Shown one piece after another: positions 5,959 through 40,329 of a stretch of 64,000 nucleotides of DNA. The stretch's first letter is position 1. Each line of letters opens with the position of its first letter. The DNA comes from Podarcis muralis (Eukaryota): NCBI RefSeq assembly GCF_964188315.1, contig NC_135673.1, forward strand, positions 32,736,001 to 32,800,000, given 5' to 3'. The notes under the pieces are model-generated. The model did no database searches and had not been told where the DNA came from. It worked only from the letters and a program-made list of their open reading frames with translations. A program made the position numbers and the translations under genes.

Positions 5959-8097
5959 CATCACTATAATCTTTTAGATGCTTGCTGAAAACTTTTTGTT
6001 TCAATCTTATACCTATCATATGCAATCCTGTATATTAGCAATGCGTATATTAGCCACACTCAGTGATACTTCCTCCCAGGCAAGTGTGCAATGGTTCTTG
6101 GTCAAATTCAGTTGGCAACTGGGTTCAGCAGAATACACTCAAAGGTACCAATAGTAATCTACACCATTGGCAACTGAGGCCACAACTTAGAACCATAGCA
6201 AGCTCTGAGGCCACAGCCAAGAACTAAGTTTAACACTGACTAAAAGCATTGATTGACAACTTGGCATTCCATTCCTGTCCACAGGCAAGTGGACTGATTT
6301 CCAAAATCAAGAGTAACTGTTCATAAGCACCCATTAACTTCTCCCTGTTACTAAGTCCCCTAGAATTACAAACCTGCAATAATTTTTACTTACCTGCTTT
6401 GCACTCATAAGGGACATTGCTCTTGTGAGTAAAATACAGACTGGTTTATTTGTTTAAAGGAGGCTTAAAAGTGCAGCAAACATGTGAAGGAGTGGCAGAG
6501 AGCACTCTGTCCCTCCTTCATCAGCTTGCTAATTTGCCTATGTGGAATTCCAGATCCAATACAAGACTGCTTCAGCTGTGATTTGACACCTTCAATGACA
6601 TAGTAAAGGTTAAGTAAATGGGAGTCTGTTTTCCCCATCATGCCTACTACAATTTAGTCACATGAGTCTTGCAGCCCAAGTCTATGCAGAGCTAAGGTAT
6701 TCCTAAGCTCACTGAAATCATTGACTTTAAGCACCATTAATGTGTACAGAATCAGACTTGTTAGAGATGCAGAGAGCTAAGCTTTAAATATTCCAGCATC
6801 CCCACTCACTTCTTTCTTCATTACTATAACTGCATTTTACTTGAAAACAAAAGAAGCTACAACTAACACACATTCCATTCCTCAGCGATCAACAGGGAAA
6901 TTGCACCAAAATGATTTGAGACTTATTTCCAAGCAAACACATTTATAATTGACCAGGGAGAAATATAGGCTTACGTTCTTGATTTCAGAAATGAGATCAT
7001 TTTAGGAATTCAACAGCCAAATATCTACACTGACCAATTAGTTAGATGTATGAACACGTCAAGTGCTGGGCTCTTCTTGAAATCTTTCATTTGATTAACC
7101 AACACCAGGAGGGTGTGTTGACTCTAGGCACTGTACTTTGATATTTGCCCATTTAGGTTTACCAAATTCTCTTCTCTGGCCTCTTAATACCATCCTAACT
7201 TTAATCCTAACAAAGATGTAAATAAATAAATAAATAAATAAATGTTCTCCAAAAATGTAGGCTATTAACATATGGGTGCCAACAAAGGCTTTTTAGGAGG
7301 TAAGCAAAGGATGACACAACAGTAATAATTGGTTGCAAGACCAATAACTCTACCTTTTAGGATAGGAAAGTGAGTTCCATTCACTTGGAAAGATCTGGAA
7401 TTGTTGTGCTTGGCATCCATCTATCTCAAGAGACAATGGTGTGTCCCTCCCGGAGTGAACTGGGTATCTACATATCTGTACTTTACACATGTTTATTACT
7501 TAATTAATAAGCCCCACTGAAATCAACAAGGATAACTTCCAGGTAGACCTGCTTGGGAATAATACGTTGGTTCTCGTTTTTTTTTCCCCTTTAAGAGCTT
7601 TGGGGGAGACTTCGCATGCACATCAACCTTTGCAGAAGTATAGCGTCATAACGACCCATAAACTTCCTTGGAATAAAGCGTCAGTTTCGCATTGCCTTTG
7701 TGTATTATGCGGTACCTCGGGGTTTTTCTTTGTTTTTGGTTAGCTGGCAACTCCATCCTAAATAGCTCTCCTTGGCCCACCCCCACCCCGAGAATCAAAG
7801 CAGGTGGAACTGATTTCCTTATGTAGGCATCTGGAACGAATGAAGCAATTTCGTAACTAGAAGTTGTGAACATGTTACCTACGTTCAGAATTAGCGGGTG
7901 TGTGTGTCTTTAATGTACCCTAAAAACAAAGACACGTCATTTATGGCAATCGCACTGCAGCAAAGTAAGCACTGAACCCATTTTCCCGAAGGGGAGACTG
8001 AGGGACTTCTGGAAAGACCTTCTGGAGATTCGCACCCCCCCCACCCCACCTGTCCTGCCTTCCCCTTTCAGGCCACGCCGGCGAAACCCCCGCTCAC

Positions 8098-8170
8098 CTG
8101 TCCCCGCACGGCCCCGTGACCTTGGGCCCATCGCCCGCACTAGCCTGGTAGCCACGCGGCAGCGGAACAT
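8098..8170 (-). CDS. AIFM1: AIFM1 coding exon 1 (mitochondrial presequence)
   Basis: ATG at 8170, [24 protein letters not shown]; donor CAG|GTGAG, phase 1. Confidence 0.9.
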
Positions 8171-8390
8171 GATGTCGGCGGCAACGGGCACCGACCCGAT
8201 TCTGGTCCGATCCCGGTCTCCACCTCTACTGACAGAAAGACGCCCGCGGAACGCCGGTCTCCCTGCGCACGCGTGTTCCCTGTCAGCGCGCGCTGCCGCT
8301 CTAGGAACGGGGGCGCTGCGACTCTACGGCCAGGGGGAGGGGCGCCTGGGAAGGGGCGTGGCCTCCTTGTCCTCCCCGCGTGCGGCGGTC

Positions 8391-8637
8391 ATGCTGCTGC
8401 TGCTGCTCCGCTCCCTCGCCGCGCGCCGCCTGCTCCGCGCTGCTGTCCTCCCCGGGCAGGGTTCGCGGAGAGGCTGCCACGCCTCGGACCGGAGCGGACG
8501 GCCGCTGCTGCTCACCACGCCCATCTTCTACGCGAACGGCCCGCCGCACATCGGGCACCTGTACTCTGCGCTGCTGGCTGATGCGCTGCACCGGCACCGG
8601 GAGCTGCAGGGCCGCGGAAGAGGGCGCTTTACCACGG
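8391..8637 (+). CDS. MARS2: MARS2 exon 1
   Basis: [13 protein letters not shown]...[23 protein letters not shown]...RFTT(G); donor G|GTCAGT, phase 1. Confidence 0.92.
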
Positions 8638-9392
8638 GTCAGTGAGAGGACTGGCAAAGGGGGTTGTGTGAATGGGTGGTGGGTTTTCTTCTAGTGTCAA
8701 AGGCTGCTAGATGCTGCTGATCTGTGGAGGTTTTTCCTTGAGCGTTCTTTAAAGCGGTTGTTGTTGTTGTGTTCGTCTGCCTTGTGCGGAGAAGGCAGTC
8801 CCACAAGCTTACAAACTTTTCTGCGGGGAGATGGGTAAATAGCAGGATAAAGTTTCAGTGAAGCACGTGTGCATGCAAGTGTGCGGAACCAGCCAACTCG
8901 CGAGGCAGTCGCTTTGTGGGAAGGATCCACAGGGGCAGCAGATCCGGGCCCCCAGACAGTAATGCATCACCTGCTGCTGCAGTGGCAGCAACAACCTTGA
9001 CACACTCCTTACCCACCCACCTAGCTGCCAGATGCTCTTGGGCTGCAGCTCTCATTAGTCTCAGCCAGAATTGCCAGCAGTGGTGATAGATGGATGCTGT
9101 AGTCCATCAACATATTTGGGGGGGGGGGTTCTTTTTCCTTTAATATAACCAGTTTTCTCCATTTTCCAGCCCTAAGAACATCAGATCAGCTGGATCACAT
9201 TAGAAGTCTGTCTAGCGCAGCCTTCCAACCTTGGCTACCCAGATGTTGGTTAGCTGCAGTTCCCATCATCCTTGATCATTGGTCAGGCTGCCTGGGGATG
9301 ATGAGAGTTGTAGCCCAACAACATCTGGAGGCCCGCAGATACCAGGTCTGTTGGATTCTTAATTCTTTGCACTCTCCTGTTTCTCTGCACAG

Positions 9393-9727
9393 GAACTGAT
9401 GAACATGGTCTGAAGATCCAGGTGACAGCAGCGGCTGCAGGCAGTTCCCCTGAACCGTTCTGTGACTGTATGTCAGCTAAATTCCAAGAACTCTTCAACC
9501 AGGCAGGCATCTCTTATACAGACTTCATCCGTACCACAGAACCTCGGCACAAACGGGCTGTAGAGCACTTCTGGGCTGCTCTGCAGGACCAGGGCTGGCT
9601 CTACCAGGCCCACTATGAAGGCTGGTACTGTACTGCTGAAGAAACCTTCTTGGCTGCTTCCCAGGTCACTGAGCGTCCTGATGCTCATGGCAACAGGCAC
9701 ATGGTCTCGCTTGAGAGTGGCCACCAG
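9393..9727 (+). CDS. MARS2: MARS2 exon 2
   Basis: Acceptor ctctgcacag; (G)TDEHGLKIQ...DFIRTTE...YEGWYC...SLESGHQ; donor CAG|GTAATG, phase 0. Confidence 0.95.
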
Positions 9728-10096
9728 GTAATGAAAAGCACCTCTGTATGAGTTCCCCTCTGTGTCTTTTCAGTTGTGATAGGGAAGCCCTGTTTTGTAG
9801 GGTGCCATCACTCGGGGAAGTATCTTTTGGGATTTGCAGCAGAGTCTGCTTTAGGATGGCCCCTATGATCTCATGCAACACATCTCAACAAGCATTTGGG
9901 GCAAATAGGAAGCACACAAATGCAGTTATATTTTAGAAACACTTTTCATCTTACCTCTGCCTTGGCTTTAAGCAAGAAAGGCTTCAGTGATACTTCTGAA
10001 ATTTAATTATTTATTCACCATAAATATTCCCAGGTTGATTCACATAAGAATAAAACAAATACTATTAAAAAATTGAAAGGAAGATTGAGAGCAGTG

Positions 10097-10460
10097 CGGG
10101 ACGCGGGTGGCGCTGTGGGTAAAAGCCTCAGCGCCTAGGGCTTGCTGATCGAAAGGTCAGCGGTTCGAATCCCCGTGGCGGGGTGCGCTCCCGTTGCTCA
10201 GTCCCAGCACCTGCCAACCTAGCAGTTCGAAAGCACTCCCGGGTGCAAGTAGATAAATAGGGACCGCTTACTGTCGGGAAGGTAAACGGCGTTTCCGTGT
10301 GCTGCGCTGGCTCGCCAGATGCAGCTTTGTCACGCTGGCCACGTGACCCGGAAGTGTCTCCGGACAGCGCTGGCCCTCGGCCTCTTAAGTGAGATGAGCG
10401 CACAACCCTAGAGTCTGTCAAGACTGGCCCGTACGGGCAGGGGTACCTTTACCTTTACCT
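10097..10460 (+). mobile_element. Sauria SINE, subtype A, full length
   Basis: tRNA-like head with B box GGTTCGAATCC, (ACCTTT)n tail, 34-bp TSD. Confidence 0.9.
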
Positions 10461-11430
10461 TATTAAAAAATTGAAAGGAAGATTGAGAGCAGTGGATTAG
10501 TAACCGTAAACAATTAAATTGTTTCAGTTTTCAGAGTTAGAAGCTGGTGGGTGGGTGTTAAAGAAATATATTTCCATGGTGCTGAAAACTTAGCAAAGTA
10601 GGTATCAGGTGGCCCTCCTTTGGTACAGCATTTCAGAGACACACGGCATGTCACAAAGTGAGAAGACCCTGGCTACATTCACACCATACATTTAAACACC
10701 TTTCCCCTACAATCCTGAGAACTGTCTTTTATTAAGGGTGCTGGGAACTGTACCTCTGTGAGGGATAAACTACAGTTCTGAGGATTCTTATTTGGGGAAC
10801 AGGTGTGATTTAAATGTGCTTGAAATGTATGTTGGGTACACAGCCCCTCTCTCCATACCTCACCCCCTAACTTTGATGTTTGAGGAAGGCATCTGATGAT
10901 GACCTCAGCACATTGGCAGACTGATGTGAAATCTCAAGTCCATAGTCATTGCTTTGATTTCCCCCCCTCCAACCTTTGATTATTATATTTGAACTCCCCT
11001 TTTTTCATCCTGCTAAGAAATCCTCCTCTGCCCCTTCCGTTTCATGCAGTAGCAAGAACACAGTCACATTGACTTTACTGCATGGCTGATTCCCAAATGA
11101 CTGCAGACACCACGAGGTTATGTAGTGTCACCAAGCAATGCTGCATCTTGCAAAATCACTCCAGAAGTGCTTCTGTCCAGCCATTCAATTGCAAGCACAC
11201 AAACCTTCTGTGTGAGTGAGGGAGGCTGAATGATGAGAAGTGATTGCTATGTGAGTCGTGGCTTAGAAATTTGGCTCCTTTTTCTATAATGTGTCTCTGG
11301 CATAGGAAGGGGCATTGGGAAAATGCAAATGTCTCTTGCAACATTGGTACACACAATCTCAAGCTTTTTTTACAGGTGGAATTATAGCAGAAATGACTGA
11401 GCAATTAAGTCAGGGTATGAGGCCAATTAA

Positions 11431-11780
11431 GGGACGCAGGTGGCGCTGTGGGTTAAACCACAGAGCCTAGGACTTGCCAATCAGAAGGTCAGGGGTTTGA
11501 ATCCCCGTGACGGGGTGAGCTCCCGTTGTTCAGTCCCTGCTCCTGCCCACCTAGCAGCTCGAATGCACGTCAAAGTGCAAGTAGATCAATAGGTACCGCT
11601 CCGGCGGGAAGGTAAACGGCGTTTTCGTGCGCTGTTCTGGTTCGCCAGAAGTGGCTTACTCATACTGGCCACATGACCCGGAAGCTGTACGCCGGCACCC
11701 TCGGCCAATAAAGCGAGATGAGCGCCACAACCCCAGAGTCGGTCACGACTGGACCTAATGGTCAGGGGTCCCTTTACCTT
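11431..11780 (+). mobile_element. Sauria SINE, subtype B, full length
   Basis: Same head/tail structure; TSD tatgaggccaa at 11416-11426 and 11781-11791. Confidence 0.9.
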
Positions 11781-13373
11781 TATGAGGCCAAATATGTGTG
11801 TGCTTCACAATCGTGCTGCACAAGCATAGAAATTTGATAATTGGTGGAAAATTCAGCATCCTGGGAATTTGAAAAGTAAGTTTCTAGTCCTTCAGTTTGC
11901 AAAGTTAATATGTAATACCTGTCACAATCCCAGAAGTGAGCAAGTGGGGCTGAGCAAGATTTCCAGTAAGAAGCCCTTAACAATTGTGTTTCTGTATTCT
12001 ATGAGAAGCAAAGAAAAAACAGTCCTGTACATTAATAGTGAAAGTTCTCTGACACTGAATCTTTATTTTGCTGAAATATCAAAACTGCATAAGAAGGAAT
12101 TAGCAGCAGGCTCAAAGGAACCTTGTAGAAACACAAAAACCTTAAGGTAATAAAAGCTATAAAGGTGACGGGTGGGAACTAAGTGAGGACTGAGCAAATT
12201 CAGTGGGCGCAGAATGATGACGGAGTTTTGTGTGGGAGGGGGAATGGAAACTGGAAAGATGGAAAGAACGTGGCTGGCTGGGACCTTTGAACACTCCAAG
12301 CAAGACACTTAGCACTGCAACATTTTGTTGCAGGTTCGACTTGTTGGTGTAACATAAGCAGACACATTAGGGTTGCTTAATTTGCACAATCTATGCAGGT
12401 TATGGGATTTGGTTTCTCTTGGCACCAAACAACGCAGCATATGCACAGCCTTGGATTATGCAGAAACAACAATTTGGCCTTTAATTCTGGGTGGACATTT
12501 TCTGCATGTTATGAGGAATTTGATTTATTTCTATACATTGTTTAATACTTAATCCATTTTGGAGGGCATAGCTGGTGTTTGTGTGAATGAGCCTGCTTTA
12601 TTATAGAAAGGCATGGTATAAATGCTGGGGGGGGGGGGGAGAATAAGGGTTCCTGGCTACTGACTGAAGCAGGGCAGTCCAACTTTTCATACTAAGTGCG
12701 CTGCAAGAGTACTTCAACACAGAACCAGCAAACCGCATGCAGTGTCGTCACGGGGACTGGAATGCTAAAATGTGATGCCCCCCTCATGCTGCCAGATAAA
12801 TGAGGTACTGGTTTTTGGCAAGGAGGTATGAGGCTTAAGCAGACCACCTCCTTCCCGAAGGTGGTGAAGCAGGAACAAGGTTTTGGAAAGGAGGCCGGAG
12901 GACCCTCCTGCCTCCTTCTCAAAGCCTAGTGCCTTGCTTAGATGGTTGGGGAGAGTCAAACGTTGCTGAGGGCCACCTATAAGGCCTCATGGGTGACATG
13001 TGGCCCTTGGGCCATGTGTTGAACCGTCCTGGTATGAAGGAATATCGTGTAGCAATTTTTCTGGAGCCTAGCAAGTCTGAGGACTCGTGTGCTATACTTT
13101 CAGTAAAATGTCCTGGGAACTGTAGTTTTGTAAGGGTGCTGAGAGTTTTTAGGAGACCCGTGCCTCCCCATTACCTTTGCAGAGCTGCAGTTACCAACAC
13201 CCTTAACAAACTACAGTTCTCAGAATTATTTGGGGGAAGCCAAAGCCAGGATATTGCTTTAAATGTATAGTGCTCCTGGGGTTTGAGAGTGGTCAATGCC
13301 TGGATGGGAGGCTGCCTAGGAGCTCTATATATGCTGCCATAAACTCTTTGAAATAAAGGGGGAATATAAATGT

Positions 13374-13839
13374 TTGGTTGGTTTTTCAAATTAGAATTTT
13401 ACAGTCACGTGTCCAACTTACAACATAAAAGCAAGATTCCAAGGAATCTCTTGGACTTCCCTCCTCCCCTTTGTGGGTCCTCTTGTTAATCATTTCCTCC
13501 TGCATCTTATATGATAATCCAAAATCTTTTACCTCTCCATTGTGTCCAAAATTCACCATTAAACTACAAGTGATATTCTAATCCCACTAACAATTTTAAC
13601 TGTTTACAATGGTTTTTAAAATAAGTTATAATCTTTCCCCATTCCTTATTAAAATTTCGGTCTTCCTGATTTCTGATTCTTCTGGTCATTTTGGCCATTT
13701 CAGCATAATCCATCAGCTTGATCTGCCATTCTTCTCTGGTAGGGACTTTATCTTCTTTCCATCTCTGGACCAATAACATCCGCACGGCCGTGGTCGCATA
13801 CATAAATAGTCTTATCTGCTCCCTTGGGATTTCACCATG
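13374..13839 (-). mobile_element. L1-clade LINE 3' fragment
   Basis: Encodes MYATTAVRMLLVQRWKEDKVPTREEWQIKLMDYAEMAK (ORF2 C-terminus); 16-bp TSD gggggaatataaatgt at 13358-13373 and 13840-13855. Confidence 0.85.
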
Positions 13840-14093
13840 GGGGGAATATAAATGTAACGCAGATGTGAGGGAACTTCTGGCCTTCTGTTGTTGGACTCTA
13901 ATTCCCATCAGCCCCAGCCAGCATAGTTTGGGGTGATGGGACTTGTACTTATGGGCAATGGGAGTAATAGTCCAGCAATATCTGGAAGACCAAATGTTCC
14001 ATCATAGATGCAATGAATATAAACAAATGAGTAACTACTTGTAGGGGAGACAGCAAGAAAAAGGTTGTGACCAGTTTCTCTCTTGCATCTCAG

Positions 14094-15239
14094 GTGCACT
14101 GGACCAAAGAGGAGAACTTCATGTTCAAACTGTCCGAATTCCGGGAACCTTTGCTGAGATGGCTCCAGGAAAGCAAGGCAGCCATAACCCCTGAGCCTTT
14201 CCACCAGCAGGTGCTCCATTGGCTGGAGCAGGACTTGCCTGACCTCTCTGTGTCGCGTGACCGAAAGCGGCTGCAGTGGGGCATCCCTGTCCCCCACGAC
14301 TCGACGCAGACCATTTACGTCTGGGTCGATGCCCTGGTGAACTACCTGACCGTTGTGGGTTATCCTGACACACACCACACCTGGTGGCCCAGTGCAACCC
14401 ACATTGTGGGCAAAGATATCCTCAAGTTCCATGCCATCTACTGGCCTGCCCTCCTCATGGCAGTGGGGCTGGAGCCTCCAGAGAAAATCCTGGTGCACTC
14501 CCACTGGACAGTTCAAGGGCAGAAGATGTCAAAAACTCTGGGCAATGTGGTAGACCCTCAGGCCTGTTTCCAGCGGTACTCAGTGGATGGCTTTCGGTAC
14601 TTCCTGCTGAGACAGGGTGTCCCTGAGCGAGACTGCGACTACTATGATGAGAAGGCTGTCAACTTGGTCAATTCAGAGTTGGCTGATGCCTTGGGGGGTC
14701 TTCTTAACCGGTGCACGGCCCCCAGCCTCAACCCCAGTGGAAGCTACCCAGGCTTTTCAGAGGCATGTTTCCCTCGGGTCATGGATGCTCATAATAGGAG
14801 AGGCAAAGCCTTGGCTGAGGACTACAAACTGGTGTCATCAGTGAAAGACCTGCCTGCTCATGTGAGCGACTGCTTCGAACACTTTCAGATCTACAAAGCT
14901 TTAGAATCGATCCTGGACTGCGTGAGGCAGACGAATGGCTTCCTTCAGAGGCACGCGCCTTGGAAACTACGTCGTGAAGATCCTGAGGAACAGCAGTGGC
15001 AAGACACCATCCTGCACATCACTCTGGAATGCCTTCGGATTTATGGGAGCCTCCTGCAACCAATGATCCCAAACATTGCTGATAAAATCCTCACCAGGCT
15101 GGGTGTTAGTCCCACGGAAAGGTCTCTAAGCAACTTGAACTTTCTTCCTCGCTACTATGGCGAAAGGTCTCCCTTTGAAGGCAGGAGGCTTGGGGCAGAT
15201 GCTGGGCTCCTATTTCCAAAGCTGGAGAAATCCAAATGA
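14094..15239 (+). CDS. MARS2: MARS2 exon 3
   Basis: Acceptor tctcag; [14 protein letters not shown]...[12 protein letters not shown]...LFPKLEKSK stop. Confidence 0.95.
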
Positions 15240-16939: not shown

Positions 16940-17305
16940 AAAGGTAAAGGTCAAGTACCCCTGGATGGTAAAGTCCAGGCAAAGGAGACTATAGGGTGCA
17001 GCGCTCATCTCGCTTTCAGTCCAAGGGAGCCGGCATTTGTACACAGACAGCTTTCCAGGTCATGACTAAACCACTTCTGGCGCAGTGGGACACCGTGACG
17101 GAAACCAGAGCACACAGAAACGCTGTTTACCTTCCCGCCACAGCGGTACCTATTTATCTACTTGCACTGGTGTGCTTTCGAACTGCTAAGTTGGCAGGAG
17201 CTGCGACAAACCAACAGGAGCTCACCTTGTCGCGGGGATTCAAACTGCCGACCTTGTGATCGGCAAGCCCAAGAGGCTCAGTGGTTTAGACCACAGCACC
17301 ACCCA
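16940..17305 (-). mobile_element. Sauria SINE, diverged older copy
   Basis: aaaggtaaagg tail and gtggtttagaccacagcacc head on reverse strand; many substitutions. Confidence 0.82.
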
Positions 17306-20559: not shown

Positions 20560-21350
20560 AATGAGCACATTTCCATGCGCAGCAGGGGATGAACAGTTAG
20601 GAGCCGAGAGAGCCGGCAAGCAAGCGGGGGCCACCCAGGCTTATTGGTTTCCCTCGTCCTGCCTTCTAGTTGGCTAAGCGCAACACAAGGCGCCGGTGGG
20701 CTGCTGCTAAGGCTCCGCCTTTGGGGCTGTGCCTGGAAGCCGGCTGGGTGTCGGCAGCCAATGAAAGCGCGGAGCGATGGGCGGCTCCTGGCCGGTGACT
20801 CGAGGGTGCTCCCGCAGCTGCGACTCATTGCTTAAATGCGGCTGGCTGGACCGACAGCTTGGAGTCTTGTAGGCAGGGAGCTGTGTTTCACCCCGGTCGC
20901 CATGCCGGCCGTACTGAGCCAACCCTGAGCTTTTCCGTCGAGTCCTGCCTTCGTTGGGTTTTCTTATTTGTTCCTTTTGCGCGGCGCCTTCCTCCCGCTC
21001 TCGCGCTACGGAAAAGCCGAGCCTTATCCTCGCCTAGCCTGCTAGCCAGCGCCGACGGCGTGTCCTTCCAGAATGGAGCTGGAAGCCTCGATGGAGCAGT
21101 CCGTTCAGACGCGCATCTTCAAGATCATCGTCATTGGCGACTCCAACGTGGGCAAGACCTGCCTGACTGTGCGCTTCTGCGGGGGAGCCTTCCCGGCAAA
21201 CACCGAAGCCACCATCGGCGTGGACTTCAGGGAGAAGGCGGTGGAGATTGAGGGAGAGCATATCAAGGTACAGCAGGAAGAAAAGCAGGGAGGGAAGAGG
21301 GAGAGAGCGGGGGAACCGGGCCTGGTGCACACAGCCTTTTCTGGGAGCCG
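20560..21350. promoter_or_regulatory. CpG island at RAB33A 5' end
   Basis: CpG-rich stretch with CCAAT (about 20758) preceding and covering exon 1. Confidence 0.7.
21073..21267 (+). CDS. RAB33A: RAB33A exon 1
   Basis: [29 protein letters not shown]...EGEHIK; donor AAG|GTACAG, phase 0. Confidence 0.93.
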
Positions 21351-22934
21351 GGTCCTCCTTCCAGGTGGCTTCGTCTGTTGTTATCGGGGTGTTTTTTTAA
21401 AGCAACCATAATTGAGGATGCTTCTTCTGAAAGCTCCGCTCGTCTTCTATTGCTGCCATGTCTGAAAGGATGTAGGGCGCCCCATGGAGGTGAGGAGAGC
21501 TGGGGAGCAAAAAATCGATGGACTCCCAGAGAAGCAGGCTATAGAACCCTATCTAGGGAGAGTAACGGGAAACCAGTATAAGACAGGCTTGGGTAGAGGA
21601 GGAGCAACAGTAGGCAAGGCACCCTGAACTGCAAGCTTCTTAAGGCACGGTGTGTAAGATGTATATATTTTGTCTAATCCGAATCCTGATGCTGTTGTCC
21701 TCACCACCATCTTAATATGCTCACAAAAACCCTATTGGGTGGGAAATGATGAGGGAGGGAGAGACAGCAAAACGGGGACTGGCCCAGTAAACTTAATGGC
21801 TAAGTAAGGATTTGAAGGGCCTTAAATCTGTGGTAGAGCTCCCGCTTTGCATGCAGAAGGTCCCAGGTTCAATCCTTGATAAAGCTGGAAGAAAGAACCC
21901 TGCCTGCAACCCTGGATAGGCTCTGCTATTCAGTACAGACAGACCAATGGCTGACTGTGTTGCATGTATATTCTCCCTAAGTACTTACATCATTCTGGCT
22001 CTAGGTTCTTCTGAAGGTTGGGGTATTAATTTCACAGTGGCTAATTTCTAAAATTACAAGTGTTTTAGGGCTCCACAGTGTATGGAAGTCAAGTGTGGTG
22101 GAAGCATTCCCCGTCCCTCACCCCCAACTTGGCAACTCCGAATTGCTAAAGCTGGTTGTGATGCCCTATAGTGGCAAGAGAAAGAGGGCCAGGGCATAGC
22201 GTTCACTGCATTTACATCACTTCATTACTCAACTACTTGATGACTTGCATCTGTGAACTGACACCCTCCTCCCCTGTTATGCCTGATATGAAAGTTCTGG
22301 CTTCAGTGCTGGAATCTGTGATGGCCTGTTCCTACAGGCAGTTCACTACCATGTCCATAATCAATTGGCATGCATGAATGATCCAGCCTCCATAACTGTA
22401 CTGTGCTCAGATGTTCTGTTCTTTATGGCTACTTCACATGTTTAACTAAGCAAACACCACCTTCCCAGTAGAATGGACAAGGTGTGGGGGAGATACACTG
22501 GTAGAAGGGGGAGGTATGAGCAGGGCCAAGATTTCAGTGCATTCTCACAGTCACATCACAGCCCAGAAACTGTACTCAGCCCCTGGTGCTTCTGTTATGG
22601 AGACTTCTGTTGAGGTCTCTGTGTGATTGCACAAGGACTGCCTATACTGTGAGATTCTGAAGCTGTTATTAACTCTGGATGTTTTCGTTTTGGATCACTT
22701 TTGCACACCAGGAATTAAGGACTGGATATATGTGTGCTGGTTCAGTCATCTCTGCTACATCCTTGCAATGTTAGGCCAATCAAGAGCACACATATTGACA
22801 GTGGGGATGGGAGAAGAAAGATATAAAATCCAGAATATTTAGGTATCATAAAATCAGCATCTGCAGAAGTGTTCAGATTGCTCAGTTACAGTAAATTCCA
22901 GGGCAAAGTATACATTGCATACTAATGCCATACT

Positions 22935-23075
22935 CAGTTTAAGAAGGATATTGACAAGCTGGAATGTATGCAGAGGGCAACCAAGAGGATCAAGGGTTTG
23001 GAAACCAAGCCTTATGAGGAATGGTTGTAGGAGTTTGGTATGTTTAGGGTCCCTTCCAACTCTACAGTTATATGC
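22935..23075 (+). mobile_element. CR1-type LINE 3' remnant
   Basis: aagaaggatattgacaagctggaa...agggcaaccaag...gggtcccttccaactct resembles CR1 3' ends. Confidence 0.6.
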
Positions 23076-23142
23076 TTCTATGAGTCATAGACCTTTAAAG
23101 AGCAAAAACTCATATAGGAGATTGCCTATACTAACCTTTCTC

Positions 23143-25201
23143 TTTTTTCTCTTTTTTTCCAGTAATTTTTTATTATTTTCCTTATTCATACTTTAACAAT
23201 ACAATACAGTAAATCACATAATTACTTTAGCTCTGCCAAGCTCACAACTTCCCATCTGCTGAAGGGATACTTCAGCGAGTATCCCTTATTTTCTTATATT
23301 GCATATTCTATTTATTTAATCTTATATCTGCCATACATTGTAAGAGCTATTTCAATCCTGCCAGTGTTTTTAAAGTTTTGCAATTGTCTTTTATATACAC
23401 CATAAATTTACTCCAACTTTCTTGAAACCTCTGGTCGTCCTGGTCCCAAATTCTTCAGTTTGGCTAACTCTGCATAACTCATCATTTTCGTCTGCCACTC
23501 CGCAATGGTAGAGACTTTTTGCACTTTCCAGTTTGGGGCAAGCATATTTCTTGCTGCAGCTGTGGCGTACATAAAGAATCTTTGGTCTACTTTATTAATT
23601 TCTTTCCCCATCAAACCCAACAAAAAGGCTTCTGTTTTTTGGGGTAAAGTGTACTTTTAAGTTCATTATAAATTAGCTTCCAAAAGTTCTTAACTTTATC
23701 ACAAGTCCACCACATATGATAGAAATCTCCATCCACCTCTTTGCACTTCTAACATTTTTTATCCTTCATCCTGTACATTTTTGCCAGCTTTACCGCTGTT
23801 AAATGCCACCTATAGATCATTTTCATTAGGTTTTCTTTTAAAGCCGTACATGCCGTAAATTTCATATTTACCTTCCACAACTCATACCATGCATCCAATT
23901 CAATATTATGCCCAAAATCTGTAGCCCATTTTATCATTGCTTCTTTCATTTTCTCATCTTTTGTAAACCATTCTAATAACAAATCCTACAGTTTGGATAA
24001 TGTTTTACCTCTGCCTTCTATTAAGTCTATTTGAAATCTTGATTTTTTTGTCTTCAAACCCAGCTTCCATTTTTCAGTATATCATTAACCTGATGGTATT
24101 GCAACCAACCTGTAAGCATACCTTCTCTTTGATCATATGGCTTAAGTTTTATCCCTTGTTCCATTTTTCTAGTAATTTTTCTAGTAATTTCTTCTTTCCC
24201 TCCATGTTAACTTTCTTGATGGTCAACACTTCTATTGGCGATATCCACCATGGGGTTTTCCTTTCCAATAATTTTTTATTTCTTTCCCACACCTCATAGA
24301 TTGACCTTCTTATCACATGATTTAAAAAACCTTTATGGACCTTTACTTTATCATAACACAGGTACGAGTGCCACCCGTACCTGTTATCATGCCCTTCTAA
24401 ATCCAAAAGGTCTGTGTTTTCCAGTGTTATCCATTCTTTTAGCCATACAAGACAGGACGCTTCATAATAGAGAGGCAAATCTACCTCTTTCTTTTTTATC
24501 TATCAAAATTTTCATTTTAATCCTCAGCTTCTTTCCCTGCCAGACAAATCTTGACAGTATTTTTTGCCACTATCTACATTGCCCTGTCCCCTTAATCATT
24601 GGAATTGTTTGGAACAAAAATAACATTCTAGGTAAAACATTCATCTTAATCGCTGATATTCTGCCCAGGAAAGAGAGTTTCAGCCTATCCCAAATTTCTA
24701 GATCTTTCTTAATCTCTCTCCATGTAGTTTCATAATTATCTTTATACAAATTTATATTTATTGTTTTCAACCATATTAGAGGTATTTCACTTTCTTAGCC
24801 ACCATGATTCCTGTCTCCTGTTGCAATTCCTCTGTCTCTTCTTTGTTCATGTTTTTAACTAACATTATTGGTCTTTTCTGAAAGGTATTGAAGCCATATG
24901 TCTAGAACAAAAAGCCAAACTTATTATAAAATAATAATTTGTCGGACACTTTTGAAATTTCTAAGGGGACCAGGCAGGGGTTCCCCCTGTCACCTTTGCT
25001 GTTTATTACGGTTTTGGAAGTTCTAAATAAGAAATTGAGAGAAACATCAGAAATTAGAGGGGTTAAGGTGGGAGTAAAAGAGTTTAAAATAAAAGTGTTT
25101 GCTGACGATCTAGTTTTAACATTAGAAGATTGAAAGAAAAGTGTACAAGAAGCCCTGCAGAAAATATAGGAATTTGGCAAAGTGGCGAGGTTTAAACTTA
25201 A
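23143..25201 (-). mobile_element. L1-clade LINE, 5'-truncated with 5' inversion (about 24900-25201 inverted)
   Basis: Minus part encodes KLSFLGRISAIKMNVLPRMLFLFQ through the C-terminus; plus part encodes GTRQGFPLSPLLF...VFADD...FKLN; 16-bp TSD tatactaacctttctc at 23127-23142 and 25202-25217. Confidence 0.9.
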
Positions 25202-25675
25202 TATACTAACCTTTCTCAACTTGGTGCTCTCTAGGTGGTTTGGATTACATCATCCCTTACCACTGGTCATGCTGACTGGGACTGATGAGAGTTATAGTCC
25301 AAAAATCTGGAGGGCACCAGGCTGGGAAAGGTTGGTCTACATGGACAACCAATAGGGTTTTGACATGGATCTTTCCCAACGCTACCTGAAGATGCCAGGG
25401 CTTGGACTTGGACCTTTTGCATGGAAAACATATACTCCATAACTGAGCTACAGCCCCTTCCGAAAGAGCAGGTGCTCTTGGGATTCAACCCCACACTGCA
25501 AACTCTACAGAGCAATTTCATAAGCATTCAGCCACAGCATCCGACCTGTCCACCACTCTCATGTCCACCTTTCTCCTTTTTCTCTCCACAGTTCCCAAAC
25601 GCAGTTCAGAACAGCAGGGAATTCTGTTTAGGAGAGGGAGTTTAGTGTAGTTGCAGTTATCTTTACCTAAGGTTA

Positions 25676-26019
25676 GGGACATGGGTGGTGCTGTGGGTTA
25701 AACCACAGAGCCTAGGGCTTGCCGATCAGAAGGTCGGCAGTTCGAATCCCCACGATGGGGTGAGCTCCTGTTGTTCAGTCCCTGTTCCTGTCAACCTAGC
25801 AGTTCGAAAGCACAAAGTGCAAGTATCCCGATCCGGCAGGAAGGTAAACGGCGTTTCCATGCGCTGCTCTGGTTCACCAGAAGCGGCTTAGTCATGCTGG
25901 CCACATGACCCAGAAGCTGTACGCCGGCTCCCTCGGTCAGTAAAGCAAGATGAGCGCCGCAACCCCAGAGTCGTCTGCGACTGGACCTAAAGGTCAGGGG
26001 TCCCTTTACCTTTACTTTT
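25676..26019 (+). mobile_element. Sauria SINE, subtype B
   Basis: TSD cctaaggtta at 25666-25675 and 26020-26029. Confidence 0.88.
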
Positions 26020-26831
26020 CCTAAGGTTAACAAGCTGCTGCAGTCAACATTATTCCCTGTCCTGCTCAACTGTCAAAGGTAAAGGAGCTCTGCCTTCCCT
26101 TGCATCTGATAGCTCATTCTCTTTGATTCTCCTTTTTAAAGAAAACTGCAGATACCCCAGTGGTCAGGATGCCATGCAGTTGTGGGTTCTGACCTGGAGT
26201 GTGCAAATAGATGTAATGTTTAAAAACGTCTTTCTTTCTTTTTAATGCTTTAAAAAAGGGGAGGTTGATAATGGAGAGCTGGCAGGAAACATTTTGCTTG
26301 ACCCTTTCCTCACTGCAATTTCTTAACTGCAAACCTCTCCCCCCACAGCAGCTTTTTCCTACCACACAGGGTTGTAAACGCACATGTTACCCTCTGTACG
26401 GCAATCTTGCATCCTCTCCCAACCATATGAACATGTTATCTAAAAATAACCCCATATAATGTGAGTGTGTGGGTACACACAGTCAAAATGACTGTTGCTC
26501 TCATTCCCCATAGCTAAGAGATGGTTTGGCGTAATGTTAAGTCTGAACTCTGAGGCTCGGGGTTTGTCTCACTCCAAACAAACCATGAACTGTAGCCAAG
26601 GTTTGCTTTTGGATTACTGCTCATGCCTTATCTGCAGGAGGCAAACCATAATGCTAAGCCAGAGCATGCCTTAGTTCCAGGTACTAGCATGGGAGCAGGA
26701 TGACCCTGGGAGGAAGTGAAGCAGCCACTATTCTTTTTTACTGTTGAAGGGGAACTGTCCCGGGCGCAATATTTTTCCCACCCGAGGGCAAAGCCTCATA
26801 AGGCTACACTGTGAGAATCCACACACTAGTG

Positions 26832-27153
26832 CAGGGGTGTCAAACTCAAATTCATCAGGGGCCGCATCAGCAGTTTGGTCACCCTCAAAGGGCCGGTTGT
26901 AACAAGTGGAGGTTTCCTGAATGCATGTAAAGTGGAGGTTTCCTGTGTAGAACGGCCGGCGCCGCTAGAGGGCAGACGTTCTCTGGCTTGTAGGCTGCCG
27001 CGCATGCGCTGAAGAGGCGGCTTTCTTGTGTCAAAAAAAAAAAAAAAGCGAGAATAAAAGGTGAAGGCTGGCGGCCGGCGGCGGCTACACGGGCCACATG
27101 ATGAGGTTTGGCGGGCCGGATCCGGCCCGCAGACCTTGTGTTTGACACCCATG
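26832..27153. mobile_element. hAT-type non-autonomous element (MITE)
   Basis: TIRs caggggtgtcaaac / gtttgacacccatg; 8-bp TSD cactagtg at 26824-26831 and 27154-27161. Confidence 0.88.
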
Positions 27154-28949
27154 CACTAGTGCATTCATGCTTAGCTGTGGTTTTGGCTTAGTGCTGTGGG
27201 CGAACTGCACCAGGCTGTGGAAAAAGTCACTTCAAATATAAAGCCATCACAGCAGACCAAGATCTGCATGCAAACTTTTCTCCTGGAAGAGCCTGCCTGC
27301 CCCAGGTTACAAAGAAGATGCAGTGTGTGGGGGTTTTTTAATTAAAAAACAACAAAAAGCAAGGAAGCATTCAAGAGTGGAACCAGCCCACATGGTCTTA
27401 AGCCAGGCATGTCCAAAGTCCGTTTTGGGGGCCTAATCCAGCCCGGCGGTCAATTTAATTTGGTCGGCCCTCATGCATGTTCACTTCATCAAATCTGGCC
27501 CTCTTTGAAAAAATTTACGGGCACCCCATCTTAAGCAGTGCAGTGTATTCCTATTGCCTCATGAATGCAGACCCAGTTTCCTTGAAGCTCCTCTGCCTCC
27601 AGGTCCTCAGAAAACCTTCTGAGGACAAAGATTGGCCATTTGGCCTTGTTTTGCTTCAGGACCAGATTACAAAGGCTAACATGTGGAAGAGATTGCTGGT
27701 TGTGGGAAAAGATTAGGTGAAGGGAGGTCAATTCATGTTTACTCAACTAAGAAAGGTGTGGGCTAGGAAGTAGGCCCATGTCTTCTTGTTAATCCCTCCT
27801 TGTCTCAGCTGGGGAGAAGGCTGATCCTACCTATGAAATGGGTCATATTAGGGAATAATAACTCTATAATTGTAGAAAAAACTTTAATTGACTTTGATTT
27901 TATTGAATTCATAATCTTTTAGGCTTCTATATTTGATTTTTATTGAATATACCCCTTCAGCATATTTTTCTTGTGAAGCAGTTTATAAATCTGCATATAT
28001 TTTAAACTAGATCACAACCAATACACACTTTCACCACTTTAAAAGTTAGAGCTTCTCCCAAAAAATTCTGAGAACAGTAGTTTACCCCTACAGAGCTACA
28101 ATTTCCAGCACTGCAGGCAAACTACAGTTCCCAGCATTCATTAGGGGAAAACCATGTGCTTTAAATGGTGTGGATATGACCTTAGATAAGTGTGTCAGAC
28201 TAGGGTCCAGCTTCAAATTGTGAATCAGCCACAAAGCTCAGAAGATGAATTGGGAGAAATCTCAGCCATACCAGGGGGTTATATAAAATAAAAGAGGGAG
28301 GAAAAACCATGTGGGACACTCTGGGCTTCCTGAAGGAAAAGCTGGATATAAATGGAGGCTGAACATTTTCTGTCAGCTATTAAAAGATTCTAGCATTTCC
28401 TTCAGAGCTCATTTGCCCTGGTTCCTGTCTTGGGTGAGTACATGCGCGTGTGGACACACACATACACATAGTGGCTGGGTCTGTGAGCTTCCTTGTTAGT
28501 TTTCCCACAGTGCCTCTGGCATTGCTTGGCTCCATGCCATTATACAAAATAGAAAGACGACAGTACAGCACGGGCATTGTGGGAATTTGTTTCAGTGGCA
28601 ACTGGTAGCTGCCTGCTGCCTCAGATGGGTGAGCCCAGAGCCTGCCAAAAGCACTTTGCTGAGGGCCTTCATATGAGCATAGATAGCTGCCCTATACCTA
28701 GTCAGATCATTGGTCCTTCCAGTTCAATATTTTCAACAAAGTCTGGGAGCAACTCTTGAGGATTTAGGCAGGAGACATTCCAAGCTCCACCTGTAATTGA
28801 ACCAGGGATTGTCTACAGGCAAAGCAGGTGCTCATACCTTGATCTTTGGATCTTCCTCCATGTCGACCCTTAATGCTGGAGCTGATCCTGCATGAATGTA
28901 CTCTCTACCTGGTTTGTAGACTCTTCAGAAATTCTGCTCTGTTCCACAG

Positions 28950-29405
28950 GTGCAGGTCTGGGACACAGCAGGCCAGGAAAGGTTCCGGAAGAGCATGGTG
29001 GAGCACTACTACCGCAATGTGCATGCTGTTGTCTTCGTCTATGATGTCACCAAGATGGCTTCCTTCATCAATCTTAAGACCTGGATTGAGGAGTGCAATG
29101 GCCATGCAGTCCCTGCCCTTGTCCCTAAAGTGCTTGTGGGAAACAAGTGTGACTTGCGGGACCAGATCCAGGTGCCATCCAGCATGGCCCTGAAGTTTGC
29201 TGATGCACATAATATGCTTTTGTTTGAAACCTCAGCCAAGGACCCCAAAGAAAGTCAGAATGTGGAATCTATTTTCATGTGTCTGGCTTGCCGGCTGAAG
29301 GCCCAGAAGTCTCTACTTTATCGGGATATGGAGAGGCAGCAGGGGAAGGCACCTAGAATGACGCTTAATGCAGACGGGAGCAGCAAAAACCCTTGTCCCT
29401 GCTGA
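28950..29405 (+). CDS. RAB33A: RAB33A exon 2
   Basis: Acceptor gttccacag; [27 protein letters not shown]...KNPCPC stop; AATAAA at 29540-29545. Confidence 0.96.
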
Positions 29406-36189: not shown

Positions 36190-36898
36190 ACATAACCTAC
36201 CCTAATTCTCCACTGTTTTTTAAACTCTATGCAAAGCAGACGCTCTTTTCCTGAGGGGCCTTTCCCTGAGGGGCTGCCTCACTCACTAGGAAAGATGCCC
36301 CTTGTACAATTTACACACGAGGAGCACAGCCACCAGTGTCCGCCGATACCCACATTTTTAAACACCTTGGGTTTGAACACGTAGGAATTCAAACCTTCTG
36401 CATCTTAAAAAGAGTTTATGAAATTTAAAAGCATTAAAACATGTTTATTGCATTGACATTTAGTTTGGATCATATTATTTATTAATCAAAACGCAGACAA
36501 TTGGAATCGAAGCCCCGCGCTCCAGAGTAGTCCGATCCCCCCCAATGGAACCTCCCATTACGAAGGACAGAAGAATTTTCACCAGAGGGATGTGAAAGGC
36601 TAGAGCGACACCGCTTGGCACCACCAACGCCAATGGGCGGGTTTTCAAATTTCTGAACGGCGATGTTAAGAATGCGTTCTACACTGTTTCTGTCTCTATG
36701 GTTCTATTGCGTTATAGAGCTCCTAGAAGGCAGGTTGGGACAGCATGGCCGAGAGAGACGGAGTATCGGGATTGGTCATCTCGTCAGGAGGCGCGACCTA
36801 TCAGGGACAGGAGGAGGCGGGACTACGCGTGCGCGGCCGGCCGGGCTTGTGCAAGGTGTTTTTTATCTGGTTGCACGCAAGAGACGAAGAGAACCCCC

Positions 36899-37199: not shown

Positions 37200-37452
37200 C
37201 CTTAAATATGCCTCAGTATAGTGTGGGGCTAGGACGAGATCGGCGACATGCAAGTCTCTTTATTCTGCCATGAGCCTCGCCGGGTGATATTTCTCTAATT
37301 ACCTCTCTGTTCCTCACGGGGACGGGTTTTTTTAAGTTGCGGAAGGACCATGTACGCTGGCGCGAATTGCTGGGACACCCTTCAGGGTGGTGAGAATGCA
37401 TGTGAAGTCTGTCCTGAACTCACACGGCTTTTGTTTCTCTCTCTTTCTCTAG

Positions 37453-37568
37453 TCCACTAACCAAAGTGAAGCTTATCAACGAGCTGAATGAGCGCGAGGC
37501 ACAGCTTGGTGTACAAGAGAAGGTCTCCTGGCATGCTGAGTACAGCGACAGTGCCTGGGTGTTTGTGG
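37453..37568 (+). CDS. RBMX2: RBMX2 exon 2
   Basis: (N)PLTKVKLINELNEREAQLGVQEKVSWHAEYSDSAWVFV(G); AG/GT flanks. Confidence 0.93.
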
Positions 37569-37682
37569 GTGGGTGTCAAGCGCAGAAGCAGCCTCCGATG
37601 CACAATCCCTGAAAGTATAGCAGTTTGTGCGACTTTTGCTGGGAACTGTACTTATTTCCTCCTCCCCTTTTTTTGCTTCTAG

Positions 37683-37734
37683 GTGGTCTTCCCTATGAGC
37701 TGACAGAAGGCGACATTATTTGTGTGTTTTCACA
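37683..37734 (+). CDS. RBMX2: RBMX2 exon 3
   Basis: (G)GLPYELTEGDIICVFS(Q); donor GTAAGT. Confidence 0.93.
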
Positions 37735-37819
37735 GTAAGTGAAAAATTGAGATCTATTTTGTATTTTACATAAAAAACATAAACAAATGAATTAAATACA
37801 TAAACATATAATCCCTTTT

Positions 37820-38730
37820 TTGTATTTCATTTTTTTATTAGTTATCCAAATTTTAACAAATCAATCCAAATTATTTAAACATTTTTTTAAATAATTAGCT
37901 TTCCTGCTCCTGTGCAAACATATGTCCAATTCCTCCAGTTGTTGCCTTCTTCATTCTTCTTATTTAATCATCTTCTCATCCTTCTATTCATTTTAATTCA
38001 TTTACATAGCTAGCCGCTCTTGTTGCCTTACAGTCAGCTCCTCTGTTATTTCCCAAACACATAAATGTCCGTGAGCAGCCTTTCAGGCACTCTTCTCAGG
38101 TCTGGTGTGAAGAGAGATTAACTGCCATCATTTATTGTCCACTCAACATTCCATTTCTTTGAGAACTCCTTTGAAGGCATTCCTTTTGACTTCCCTCCCC
38201 CACATTGTGGATCTTAATGAAATGATTTTCCCCACTCTGTATCTCTATCACAACTATTTTTATAAATCCTTTGTCAATCCATAGTTCAAATTTTTACTAC
38301 AGATTTTCTGTCAACCCTACCAATGTATGTAATTGTTCACAATAGCTTTTCAAATAAATTATAAACTTTCCCCATTCTTTATTAAAGACTTCTTCCTGGT
38401 TTCTAATTTTTTCTGTACGTTTTGACATCTCAGCATAGTTCATCAGTTTTGTCTGCCACTCTTCTTTGGTCGGTGTTGTACCATCTTTCCATTTCTGGGC
38501 TAAGAGAGTGTGCACAGCCGTGGTCACATACATAGTTTTGTCTGGCCCATTGGGATCTCTGGTCCTATAATACCTAAAAGAAAAGCTTCTGGTTTCTTAG
38601 GAAAAGTTGTTTTCGACATTTTTTTCAGTTCATTATATATCATTTCCCAGAGGTCTTTTAAAACATTTATGGTGCAGTCTACTCAGAAGTAAGCCCCATC
38701 AAATTCAATATGACTTATCCACACTTCCTT
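37820..38730 (-). mobile_element. L1-clade LINE 3' fragment in RBMX2 intron 3
   Basis: MYVTTAVHTLLAQKWKDGTTPTKEEWQTKLMNYAEMSK on minus strand plus A-rich 3'UTR; ends approximate. Confidence 0.78.
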
Positions 38731-39682: not shown

Positions 39683-39812
39683 GTATGGGGAAATTGTGAA
39701 CATAAATCTAGTACGTGATAAAAAGACAGGGAAATCCAAAGGTTTCTGTTTCATTTGCTATGAAGATCAGCGAAGCACCATTCTTGCGGTTGATAATTTT
39801 AATGGAATAAAG
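39683..39812 (+). CDS. RBMX2: RBMX2 exon 4
   Basis: [43 protein letters not shown]. Confidence 0.95.
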
Positions 39813-40151
39813 GTTGGTTTGGCAATTGGAGACATAAAGTGTCTAGAATTCCTCTCTGTTGTACTTAGCTACTAGAGTCACGCTGTGATAAGTCCTCACT
39901 CTAGAAGATGCATTGAGTCACCAGACTCTTCTAGGAAAGGTTTGCGGAAATTGAGCATTTTCAATATCCCTCAAAAGGACTAGTCATAGTATTCTGTCAG
40001 GCATCTTAACATTCTATGAGTTTAGTTCTTATTTTGCTCCAGGCTTATGTTTTGTGGTGCCACTTCTGCCTAAATCAAAAGAAGAGGAGAATAACAAGGT
40101 TGACAGTTTAGATGTGTTTGTTCCATAATTGTAATGATTCTCTGTTCACAG

Positions 40152-40329
40152 ATTAAAGGAAGGACAATTCGTGTGGACCATGTGGCTAACTATCGCCCAC
40201 CAAAAGACTCTGAGGATATTGATGATGTAACAAAAGCTCTCCGAGAAAAAGGATGTGGTGCTAAAACACCTCCAAGTTCACCAGAGTCTTCAAAAGATAG
40301 TGAGGTGGTAGTAAAGAAACACAAAAAAG
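40152..40329 (+). CDS. RBMX2: RBMX2 exon 5
   Basis: IKGRTIRVDHVANYRPPKDSEDIDDVTKALREKGCGAKT...KKHKK; donor G|GTAACA. Confidence 0.93.

What the first reader, a model, noticed from the sequence alone, without database searches (positions are those of the whole stretch)
8391..15239. Intron-containing MARS2 between AIFM1 and RAB33A: probable parent locus of the intronless mammalian gene
Seen: complete three-exon MARS2 with two GT-AG introns. Known (recalled): human MARS2 is single-exon on 2q33, and human AIFM1 and RAB33A are neighbours on Xq26 with no MARS2 between them. Inference: this is the ancestral amniote position, and mammals kept a retrocopy on an autosome and lost the X-region parent (an orphan retrogene / out-of-X move of an essential mitochondrial gene).
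Basis: partly seen in the sequence, partly recalled or inferred. Interest (0 to 1): 0.7.

Follow-up and report, generated by a model that had tools for sequence, protein, structure and literature searches.

The report
Lizard MARS2: parent of mammalian retrogene
This is the ordinary, already annotated three-exon gene for the mitochondrial methionyl-tRNA synthetase of the wall lizard, sitting where the ancestor of the intronless therian MARS2 once sat; the mammalian gene is a retrocopy that replaced its parent, but that was published in 2013 and 2016.

Summary
Observation confirmed. Window 8391-15239 (+) holds a complete three-exon MARS2 with two GT-AG introns. Its product equals the 575-aa NCBI protein of Podarcis muralis. 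It lies head-to-head with AIFM1 and upstream of RAB33A.

Interpretation supported by my tests:
- Both introns sit at the same codon and phase in lizard, quail and cod; in platypus intron 2 and the intron 1 acceptor match, its exon 1 lying outside the locus.
- Quail has the order AIFM1-MARS2-RAB33A; platypus has MARS2-RAB33A-SLC25A14.
- A marsupial and a rodent MARS2 are uninterrupted. The rodent copy has no AIFM1 or RAB33A within 10 kb.
- The gene tree follows the species tree, so the lizard gene is not a separate paralogue.
- Because platypus shares the state of sauropsids, the therian state is derived. The parent was lost after the monotreme split.

The core idea is not new. MARS2 is listed as a human orphan retrogene by Ciomborowska et al. 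2013 and Carelli et al. 2016. Dean et al. 2015 counted mitochondrial genes that left X-syntenic chicken regions for human chromosome 2.

The small additions here are the exact parent interval, its retention in platypus (echidna has a near-identical protein), and conservation of both introns back to a teleost.

Not shown: that X-linkage drove the move, and absence of a remnant in therians. The RNA check could not be run.

The parts
8391..8637 (+). MARS2 exon 1: start codon, Arg/Leu-rich N-terminal presequence and the HIGH motif (PHIGHLYS). It ends after the first base of a Gly codon (phase 1).
   Evidence: (tRNA-synt_1g profile 2-37).
8638..9392 (+). Intron 1 (755 nt, GT...AG, phase 1, inside the Gly codon before TDEHG).
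   Evidence: The position and phase are the same in quail and cod, and the platypus acceptor matches.
9393..9727 (+). MARS2 exon 2 (G|TDEHGLKIQ ... SLESGHQ).
   Evidence: (profile 45-137).
9728..14093 (+). Intron 2 (4366 nt, GT...AG, phase 0, between GHQ and VHW). It holds repeat debris: a SINE-like copy at 10128-10421 and a LINE ORF2 tail at 13564-13908.
   Evidence: The position and phase are the same in quail, platypus and cod.
14094..15239 (+). MARS2 exon 3: the rest of the catalytic domain with KMSKT, the anticodon-binding domain and the stop codon.
   Evidence: profile 179-390, Anticodon_3; 100% identity to P0001.
8171..8390 (.). About 220-bp spacer between the AIFM1 and MARS2 start codons, inside a CpG-rich stretch (7900-8700: GC 0.66, CpG o/e 0.89). 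It is a probable bidirectional promoter, with an NRF1-like palindrome at 8264-8275.
   Evidence: Promoter activity is inferred, not tested.
7940..8170 (-). AIFM1 exon 1 region ([10 protein letters not shown]...). Further AIFM1 exons lie at about 1966-2094 and 652-747 on the minus strand.
   Evidence: (AIF-MLS E 4e-4 on exon 2; collinear with the quail gene that carries AIF-MLS, Pyr_redox_2 and AIF_C).
21073..29405 (+). RAB33A, two coding exons (21073-21270 and 28950-29405).

Best explanation
The stretch is the single working MARS2 gene of the wall lizard. It encodes a class I methionyl-tRNA synthetase that is imported into mitochondria. It has three exons and is probably transcribed from a CpG-rich bidirectional promoter shared with AIFM1.

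It keeps the structure of bony vertebrates, with two introns at fixed positions. It also keeps the amniote position, between AIFM1 and RAB33A.

In the stem of therian mammals a spliced MARS2 mRNA was reverse-transcribed and inserted elsewhere in the genome. That intronless copy took over, and the parent between AIFM1 and RAB33A, on the chromosome that became the X, was lost. Monotremes still use the parent.

Shown here:
- the gene model;
- the shared intron positions;
- the synteny in lizard, bird and platypus;
- the intronless state in a marsupial and a rodent;
- orthology.

Inferred: retroposition as the mechanism, a single event in the therian stem, and promoter sharing.
For: Gene model and identity.

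Introns: the same position and phase are seen in quail (L001), platypus (L003: intron 2 and the intron 1 acceptor) and cod (L005).

Synteny: quail has AIFM1(-)|MARS2(+)|RAB33A|RRM|Mito_carr. Platypus has MARS2|RAB33A|Mito_carr.

Intronless therian copies:
- Peromyscus MARS2 spans 1770 bp for 589 aa plus the stop. It gives one uninterrupted HSP, and the peptides RFSTGTDEHG and SGHPVSWTKEEN run straight across both intron sites.
- Gracilinanus MARS2 spans 1818 bp for 605 aa plus the stop.
- There is no AIFM1 or RAB33A similarity within 10 kb of the Peromyscus gene.

Orthology: the tree is teleost | amphibian | sauropsid | (platypus,(marsupials, eutherians)) with starred support.

Monotreme copy: the platypus gene keeps HIGH and KMSKS and an open 378-codon exon 3. 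The echidna protein falls in the same 90% cluster.

Selection: pN is far below pS in all pairs.

Literature: PMC3548309 Table 1 row 17, and PMC4772013, whose text names MARS2 among its orphan retrogenes and cites its Table 2.
Against:
- No poly(A) relic or target-site duplication is visible at the rodent copy. This is expected after more than 150 million years, but it means retroposition rests on the joint loss of both introns plus relocation.
- Shared position of the marsupial and eutherian copies was not tested (no DNA or neighbours for the marsupial), so one event rather than two is assumed.
- AIFM1 next to platypus MARS2 was not seen, because exon 1 lies outside the locus.
- In cod the gene lies by BTK-TIMM8A and not by AIFM1 or RAB33A. 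A skate has no MARS2 within 10 kb of RAB33A. So the position is shown for amniotes only.
Confidence: 0.9

Rival explanations
1. The retrocopy arose earlier, in the stem of all mammals or before. Both copies coexisted for a time. Monotremes then lost the retrocopy and therians lost the parent.
For: Nothing here dates the insertion itself. Only the loss of the parent is bracketed. The platypus parent is very divergent (branch 0.72, GC3 1.00), and relaxed constraint from a second copy could in principle cause that.
Against: The platypus gene keeps its catalytic motifs, an open frame and pN far below pS. Extreme GC3 points to biased gene conversion, not decay. This scenario also needs one more loss.
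Confidence: 0.1
2. Marsupials and eutherians acquired intronless MARS2 copies independently, through two retropositions and two parent losses.
For: Shared synteny of the two therian copies was not tested here (one search gave no DNA or neighbours).
Against: This is less parsimonious. Marsupials and eutherians share a well-supported stem branch of 0.20. Carelli et al. treat orphan retrogenes as families (PMC4772013).
Confidence: 0.05
3. There was no retroposition. A DNA-level move of the gene was followed by loss of both introns, or the introns were gained in non-therians.
For: No poly(A) tail or target-site duplication is left at the rodent copy.
Against: Intron gain is excluded, because cod, quail, lizard and platypus share both positions and phases. 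Precise loss of both introns together with relocation away from both neighbours is the signature of an mRNA intermediate.
Confidence: 0.04

Closest known systems
Human/therian MARS2 as an 'orphan retrogene' (Ciomborowska et al. 2013, PMC3548309; Carelli et al. 2016, PMC4772013)
   Same: The claim is the same: the intronless mammalian MARS2 is a retrocopy that replaced a multi-exon parent still present in outgroups such as chicken. Ciomborowska et al. also found no trace of the parent in the human genome for any gene except CHMP1B.
   Different: The text I could read does not name the parent interval (AIFM1-RAB33A), the X homology or the state in platypus. Their Figure 1 and Table 2 were not readable here. 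This window is the squamate ortholog of the parent, not a new case.
Movement of mito-nuclear genes off X-syntenic regions (Dean, Zimmer & Mank 2015, PMC4350183)
   Same: They count three mitochondrial genes that lie in X-syntenic chicken regions but on human autosomes, two of them on chromosome 2. A supplementary row links a chicken chromosome 4 protein to ENSP00000282276 on HS2. From memory that ID is MARS2; I could not verify it.
   Different: They found no X-to-autosome move between platypus and human using the old platypus assembly. The chromosome-level assembly used here shows MARS2 beside RAB33A in platypus, which would add one such move. They do not name the gene or discuss retroposition.
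Classical out-of-X retrogenes (Emerson 2004 and Potrzebowski 2008, both cited in PMC3548309 and PMC4772013)
   Same: The parent is on the (proto-)X and the intronless copy is on an autosome. The timing is compatible with the therian stem.
   Different: In classical cases the X parent survives and the autosomal copy is often testis-biased. Here the parent is gone and the copy is the housekeeping gene. No expression data were examined here.
Bacterial-type class I methionyl-tRNA synthetase (Pfam tRNA-synt_1g with Anticodon_3)
   Same: The domains and the HIGH and KMSK(S/T) motifs are present.
   Different: It has an N-terminal mitochondrial presequence, and no C-terminal extension domain was detected by Pfam.

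Membership tests
Mitochondrial methionyl-tRNA synthetase (MARS2 orthologs) | Class I MetRS catalytic domain (tRNA-synt_1g) across the whole protein | tested here: met
   E 3e-9, 5e-25 and 6e-64 on exons 1-3, with profile positions in register.
Mitochondrial methionyl-tRNA synthetase (MARS2 orthologs) | HIGH and KMSKS signature motifs | tested here: met
   PHIGHLYS in exon 1 and [10 protein letters not shown] in exon 3.
Mitochondrial methionyl-tRNA synthetase (MARS2 orthologs) | MetRS anticodon-binding domain | tested here: met
   Anticodon_3, E 1.5e-9, exon 3 residues 238-339.
Mitochondrial methionyl-tRNA synthetase (MARS2 orthologs) | One-to-one orthology with named vertebrate MARS2 | tested here: met
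   100% identity to the NCBI Podarcis protein. The tree follows the species tree.
Mitochondrial methionyl-tRNA synthetase (MARS2 orthologs) | Mitochondrial targeting presequence and import | not tested
   The N-terminus [20 protein letters not shown] is Arg/Leu-rich with no acidic residues. No predictor or experiment was used.
Parent locus of an orphan retrogene | Intron-bearing orthologs in outgroups with shared intron positions | tested here: met
   Lizard, quail, platypus and cod. The salamander gene spans 68 kb.
Parent locus of an orphan retrogene | The derived copy is intronless and covers the parental exon junctions | tested here: met
   Peromyscus. Gracilinanus by gene span.
Parent locus of an orphan retrogene | The derived copy lies at a different genomic place from the parent | tested here: met
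   No AIFM1 or RAB33A within 10 kb of the Peromyscus MARS2. In lizard and quail AIFM1 is within 0.3 kb and RAB33A within 2-6 kb; in platypus RAB33A is within about 4 kb, and AIFM1 was not seen because exon 1 lies outside the locus.
Parent locus of an orphan retrogene | The parent is absent from the lineage that carries the retrocopy | not testable with these tools
PMC3548309 reports no parental trace in human for any gene except CHMP1B.
Parent locus of an orphan retrogene | Poly(A) relic or target-site duplication at the retrocopy | tested here: inconclusive
   No A-rich tract within 3 kb downstream of the Peromyscus stop. This is expected at this age.
Out-of-X retrogene | The parent lies on the X or on the chromosome that became the X | tested here: inconclusive
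   Mouse RAB33A lies on a 169,476,592-bp record, which from memory is the length of the mouse X. The platypus locus is on CM014205.1, and its being chromosome 6 is my guess from accession order. Platypus chromosome 6 is X-syntenic according to PMC4350183.
Out-of-X retrogene | The move was driven by X-linkage (meiotic silencing, dosage, conflict), with the X parent retained and a testis-biased copy | not tested
   The parent is lost, not retained. No expression data were examined. The timing is only bracketed between the monotreme split and the therian ancestor.

The most novel reading that the evidence does not exclude
MARS2 is a housekeeping mitochondrial gene whose replacement by an autosomal retrocopy was selected because its parent locus became X-linked in the therian stem, through meiotic silencing, halved dosage or mito-nuclear sexual conflict. 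That would make it a rare 'out-of-X orphan'. It would also add an X-to-autosome move after the monotreme split that the 2015 test of the conflict hypothesis scored as zero.
Probability: 0.2. Interest if true: 0.5.

Novelty: already known. Interest (0 to 1): 0.22.

Why it matters
It gives a clean, checkable example of an essential mitochondrial gene that was replaced by its own retrocopy. The parent interval is pinned to AIFM1-RAB33A, the parent is still in use in monotremes, and both introns date back at least to the ancestor of bony vertebrates. This narrows the loss of the parent to the therian stem, the period in which the therian X arose. It also corrects by one gene a published count of mitochondrial genes that left the proto-X. 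The lizard gene itself is ordinary.

Tried and rejected
- Failed or empty contig look-ups:
  - turtle MARS2;
  - caecilian MARS2;
  - coelacanth RAB33A;
  - sterlet RAB33A;
  - Xenopus RAB33A, which was withheld.
- Skate: no MARS2 within 10 kb of RAB33A.
- Salamander: no called AIFM1 within 10 kb of MARS2 and no DNA returned.
- Cod: MARS2 lies by BTK, TIMM8A and a NIPA-like gene, with no RAB33A nearby. The pre-amniote position therefore stays open.
- Supplements of the two retrogene papers are not held. The timing shown in their Figure 1 and Table 2 could not be read.
- I could not confirm that ENSP00000282276 is MARS2. Chicken Ensembl ID numbers proved not to be positional.
- The spliced model was searched exon by exon, by reference. 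I did not build or submit a joined sequence. For whole-protein work I used the database protein P0001.
- No human contig was fetched or compared.
- The large representative search was not used.
Full report
WHAT IS THERE

The window comes from the common wall lizard. Exon 3 of the reported gene is 100% identical to the NCBI protein 'methionine--tRNA ligase, mitochondrial [Podarcis muralis]' (P0001, 575 aa).

The gene model, read from the sequence:
- Exon 1 is 8391-8637. It ends after the first base of a Gly codon, and the donor GT is at 8638.
- Exon 2 is 9393-9727, with acceptor AG at 9391-9392 and donor GT at 9728.
- Exon 3 is 14094-15239, with acceptor AG at 14092-14093 and stop TGA at 15237-15239.

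The three translated pieces plus the split Gly codon give 575 residues. This reproduces P0001 exactly.

Pfam tRNA-synt_1g matches the exons in register, at profile positions 2-37, 45-137 and 179-390. Anticodon_3 matches exon 3. The HIGH motif (PHIGHLYS) and the KMSK(T) motif are present.

I searched the model exon by exon, by reference, and did not build a joined sequence. Whole-protein comparisons used the stored protein P0001. The window has no N.

NEIGHBOURS

- AIFM1 lies on the minus strand with its start codon at about 8170 (MFRCRV...). Its exon 2 matches the AIF-MLS family (E 4e-4). Its first three exons are collinear with the quail gene that carries AIF-MLS, Pyr_redox_2 and AIF_C.
- The two start codons are about 220 bp apart, inside a CpG-rich stretch (GC 0.66, CpG o/e 0.89). 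The stretch holds an NRF1-like palindrome at 8264-8275. That pattern has two matches in the window against none in 100 shuffles. A shared bidirectional promoter is therefore likely, but it is inferred.
- RAB33A follows on the plus strand, with exons 21073-21270 and 28950-29405. These are 85-91% identical to named RAB33A proteins, against 66% for RAB33B.
- Next come an RRM gene at 37451-41269 and an SLC25A14-like carrier from 53392.

COMPARATIVE TESTS

All three tests favour it.

(1) Introns in outgroups.
- Intron 1 lies in phase 1, inside the Gly codon before TDEHG. Intron 2 lies in phase 0, between GH(Q/E/P/K) and V(H/E)W.
- These positions hold in lizard, quail (L001) and cod (L005). In platypus (L003) intron 2 and the acceptor of intron 1 match; exon 1 lies outside the locus.
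- A salamander MARS2 spans 68 kb for 587 aa.
- The three-exon structure therefore dates at least to the ancestor of bony vertebrates.

(2) Position.
- Quail has AIFM1(-)|MARS2(+)|RAB33A|RRM|Mito_carr.
- Platypus has an intron-bearing MARS2 directly upstream of RAB33A and a Mito_carr gene.
- Because a mammal (platypus) shares the state of sauropsids, the therian state is derived. No deeper outgroup is needed for this step.
- Deeper in the tree the position is open. Cod MARS2 lies by BTK, TIMM8A and a NIPA-like gene. A skate has no MARS2 within 10 kb of RAB33A.

(3) Paralogy.
- A careful ML tree of 30 MARS2 proteins follows the species tree: teleosts, amphibians, sauropsids (with Podarcis among squamates), then platypus plus (marsupials plus eutherians).
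- All of these splits have starred support.

THE THERIAN COPIES

- Peromyscus MARS2 spans 1770 bp for 589 aa plus the stop. It aligns to the lizard protein in one uninterrupted HSP. It reads RFSTGTDEHG and SGHPVSWTKEEN straight across the two intron sites.
- Its 10-kb flanks hold no AIFM1 or RAB33A similarity.
- Its 5' side is a CpG island (GC 0.64, o/e 1.06). This agrees with the published remark that orphan retrogenes recruited CpG-island promoters (PMC4772013).
- No poly(A) relic is left.
- The marsupial Gracilinanus gene spans 1818 bp for 605 aa plus the stop.

MONOTREMES

- The platypus gene keeps HIGH and KMSKS and an open 378-codon exon 3.
- The echidna protein falls in the same 90% identity cluster.
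- A word search with platypus exon 3 found no second monotreme MARS2 among the hits that carry a source name. This is weak evidence that monotremes lack the retrocopy.
- pN is far below pS in every pair.
- The platypus copy is odd in one respect. Its exon 3 has GC 0.77 and GC3 1.00, and its tree branch is 0.72 against a median of 0.14. I read this as extreme GC-biased evolution and not as decay.

WHAT IS ALREADY KNOWN

- MARS2 is row 17 of the 25 human 'orphan retrogenes' of Ciomborowska et al. 2013 (PMC3548309). Those authors compared human with chicken, platypus, opossum, frog and zebrafish. They report no parental trace in human for any gene except CHMP1B.
- Carelli et al. 2016 (PMC4772013) list MARS2 among ten orphan retrogene families. 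They note that human MARS2 rescues the fly mutant.
- Dean, Zimmer and Mank 2015 (PMC4350183) counted three mitochondrial genes that moved from X-syntenic chicken regions to human autosomes, two of them to chromosome 2.
- A supplementary row in that paper links a chicken chromosome 4 protein to ENSP00000282276 on HS2. From memory this ID is MARS2, and I could not verify it.
- With the old platypus assembly they scored zero X-to-autosome moves between platypus and human. The locus would add one.

VERDICT

The lizard gene is an annotated housekeeping gene.

The small increments here are:
- the exact parent interval;
- its retention in both monotremes, which places the loss of the parent in the therian stem;
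- conservation of both introns back to a teleost.

Whether X-linkage caused the replacement is not shown.

NOT DONE

- A remnant search in therian AIFM1-RAB33A intervals.
- A synteny comparison of the marsupial and eutherian copies.
- No human sequence was fetched or compared.

Noticed in passing
L003:5054-6190 (platypus MARS2 exon 3): All 378 third codon positions are G or C (GC3 1.00, GC 0.77). The protein has the longest branch in the tree (0.72 against a median of 0.14) and a deviant composition. The frame is open and the catalytic motifs are kept. This looks like extreme GC-biased evolution of a gene that is still in use.
   Followed up: partly
window 8264-8275 and 36824-36835: The NRF1-like palindrome YGCGCAYGCGYR occurs twice, against none in 100 shuffles. 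One copy lies in the AIFM1/MARS2 spacer and the other about 600 bp upstream of the first conserved exon of the RRM gene.
   Followed up: partly
window 37451-41269 (+): An RRM-domain gene with an Arg/Ser/Asp/Lys-rich last exon, RBMX2-like by my recollection, lies between RAB33A and SLC25A14, as in quail. In platypus no such gene is called in that interval.
   Followed up: partly
protein P0012 (Pituophis catenifer): A 545-aa protein with MetRS domains, 76% identical to lizard exon 3, is named 'ras-related protein Rab-33A isoform X2' by NCBI. This suggests a MARS2-RAB33A read-through model, or a merged annotation, in a snake.
   Followed up: no
L005 (cod): Cod MARS2 lies just downstream of BTK, TIMM8A and a NIPA-like gene. 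BTK and TIMM8A are neighbours on the human X by my recollection. The teleost gene is thus still among X-orthologous genes, though not at AIFM1-RAB33A.
   Followed up: no
window 10128-10421 (-), 16996-17259 (+), 46646-46987 (+), 48076-48486 (-): Repeated SINE-like element, giving similar spurious ORFs (MTDSRVVRSSHLRGRGPALSGDTSGSRGQRDKAA...). One copy lies in MARS2 intron 2.
   Followed up: no
window 50499-52211 (+) and 13564-13908 (-): A 570-aa open LINE ORF2 C-terminal part lies upstream of SLC25A14. A related LINE tail fragment lies inside MARS2 intron 2.
   Followed up: no
window 8169-8390 (+): The MARS2 reading frame stays open for 74 codons upstream of the annotated ATG, back to an ATG at 8169. 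That ATG overlaps the AIFM1 start codon on the other strand. It is probably only a GC-rich 5' region, but the true MARS2 start needs transcript data.
   Followed up: no
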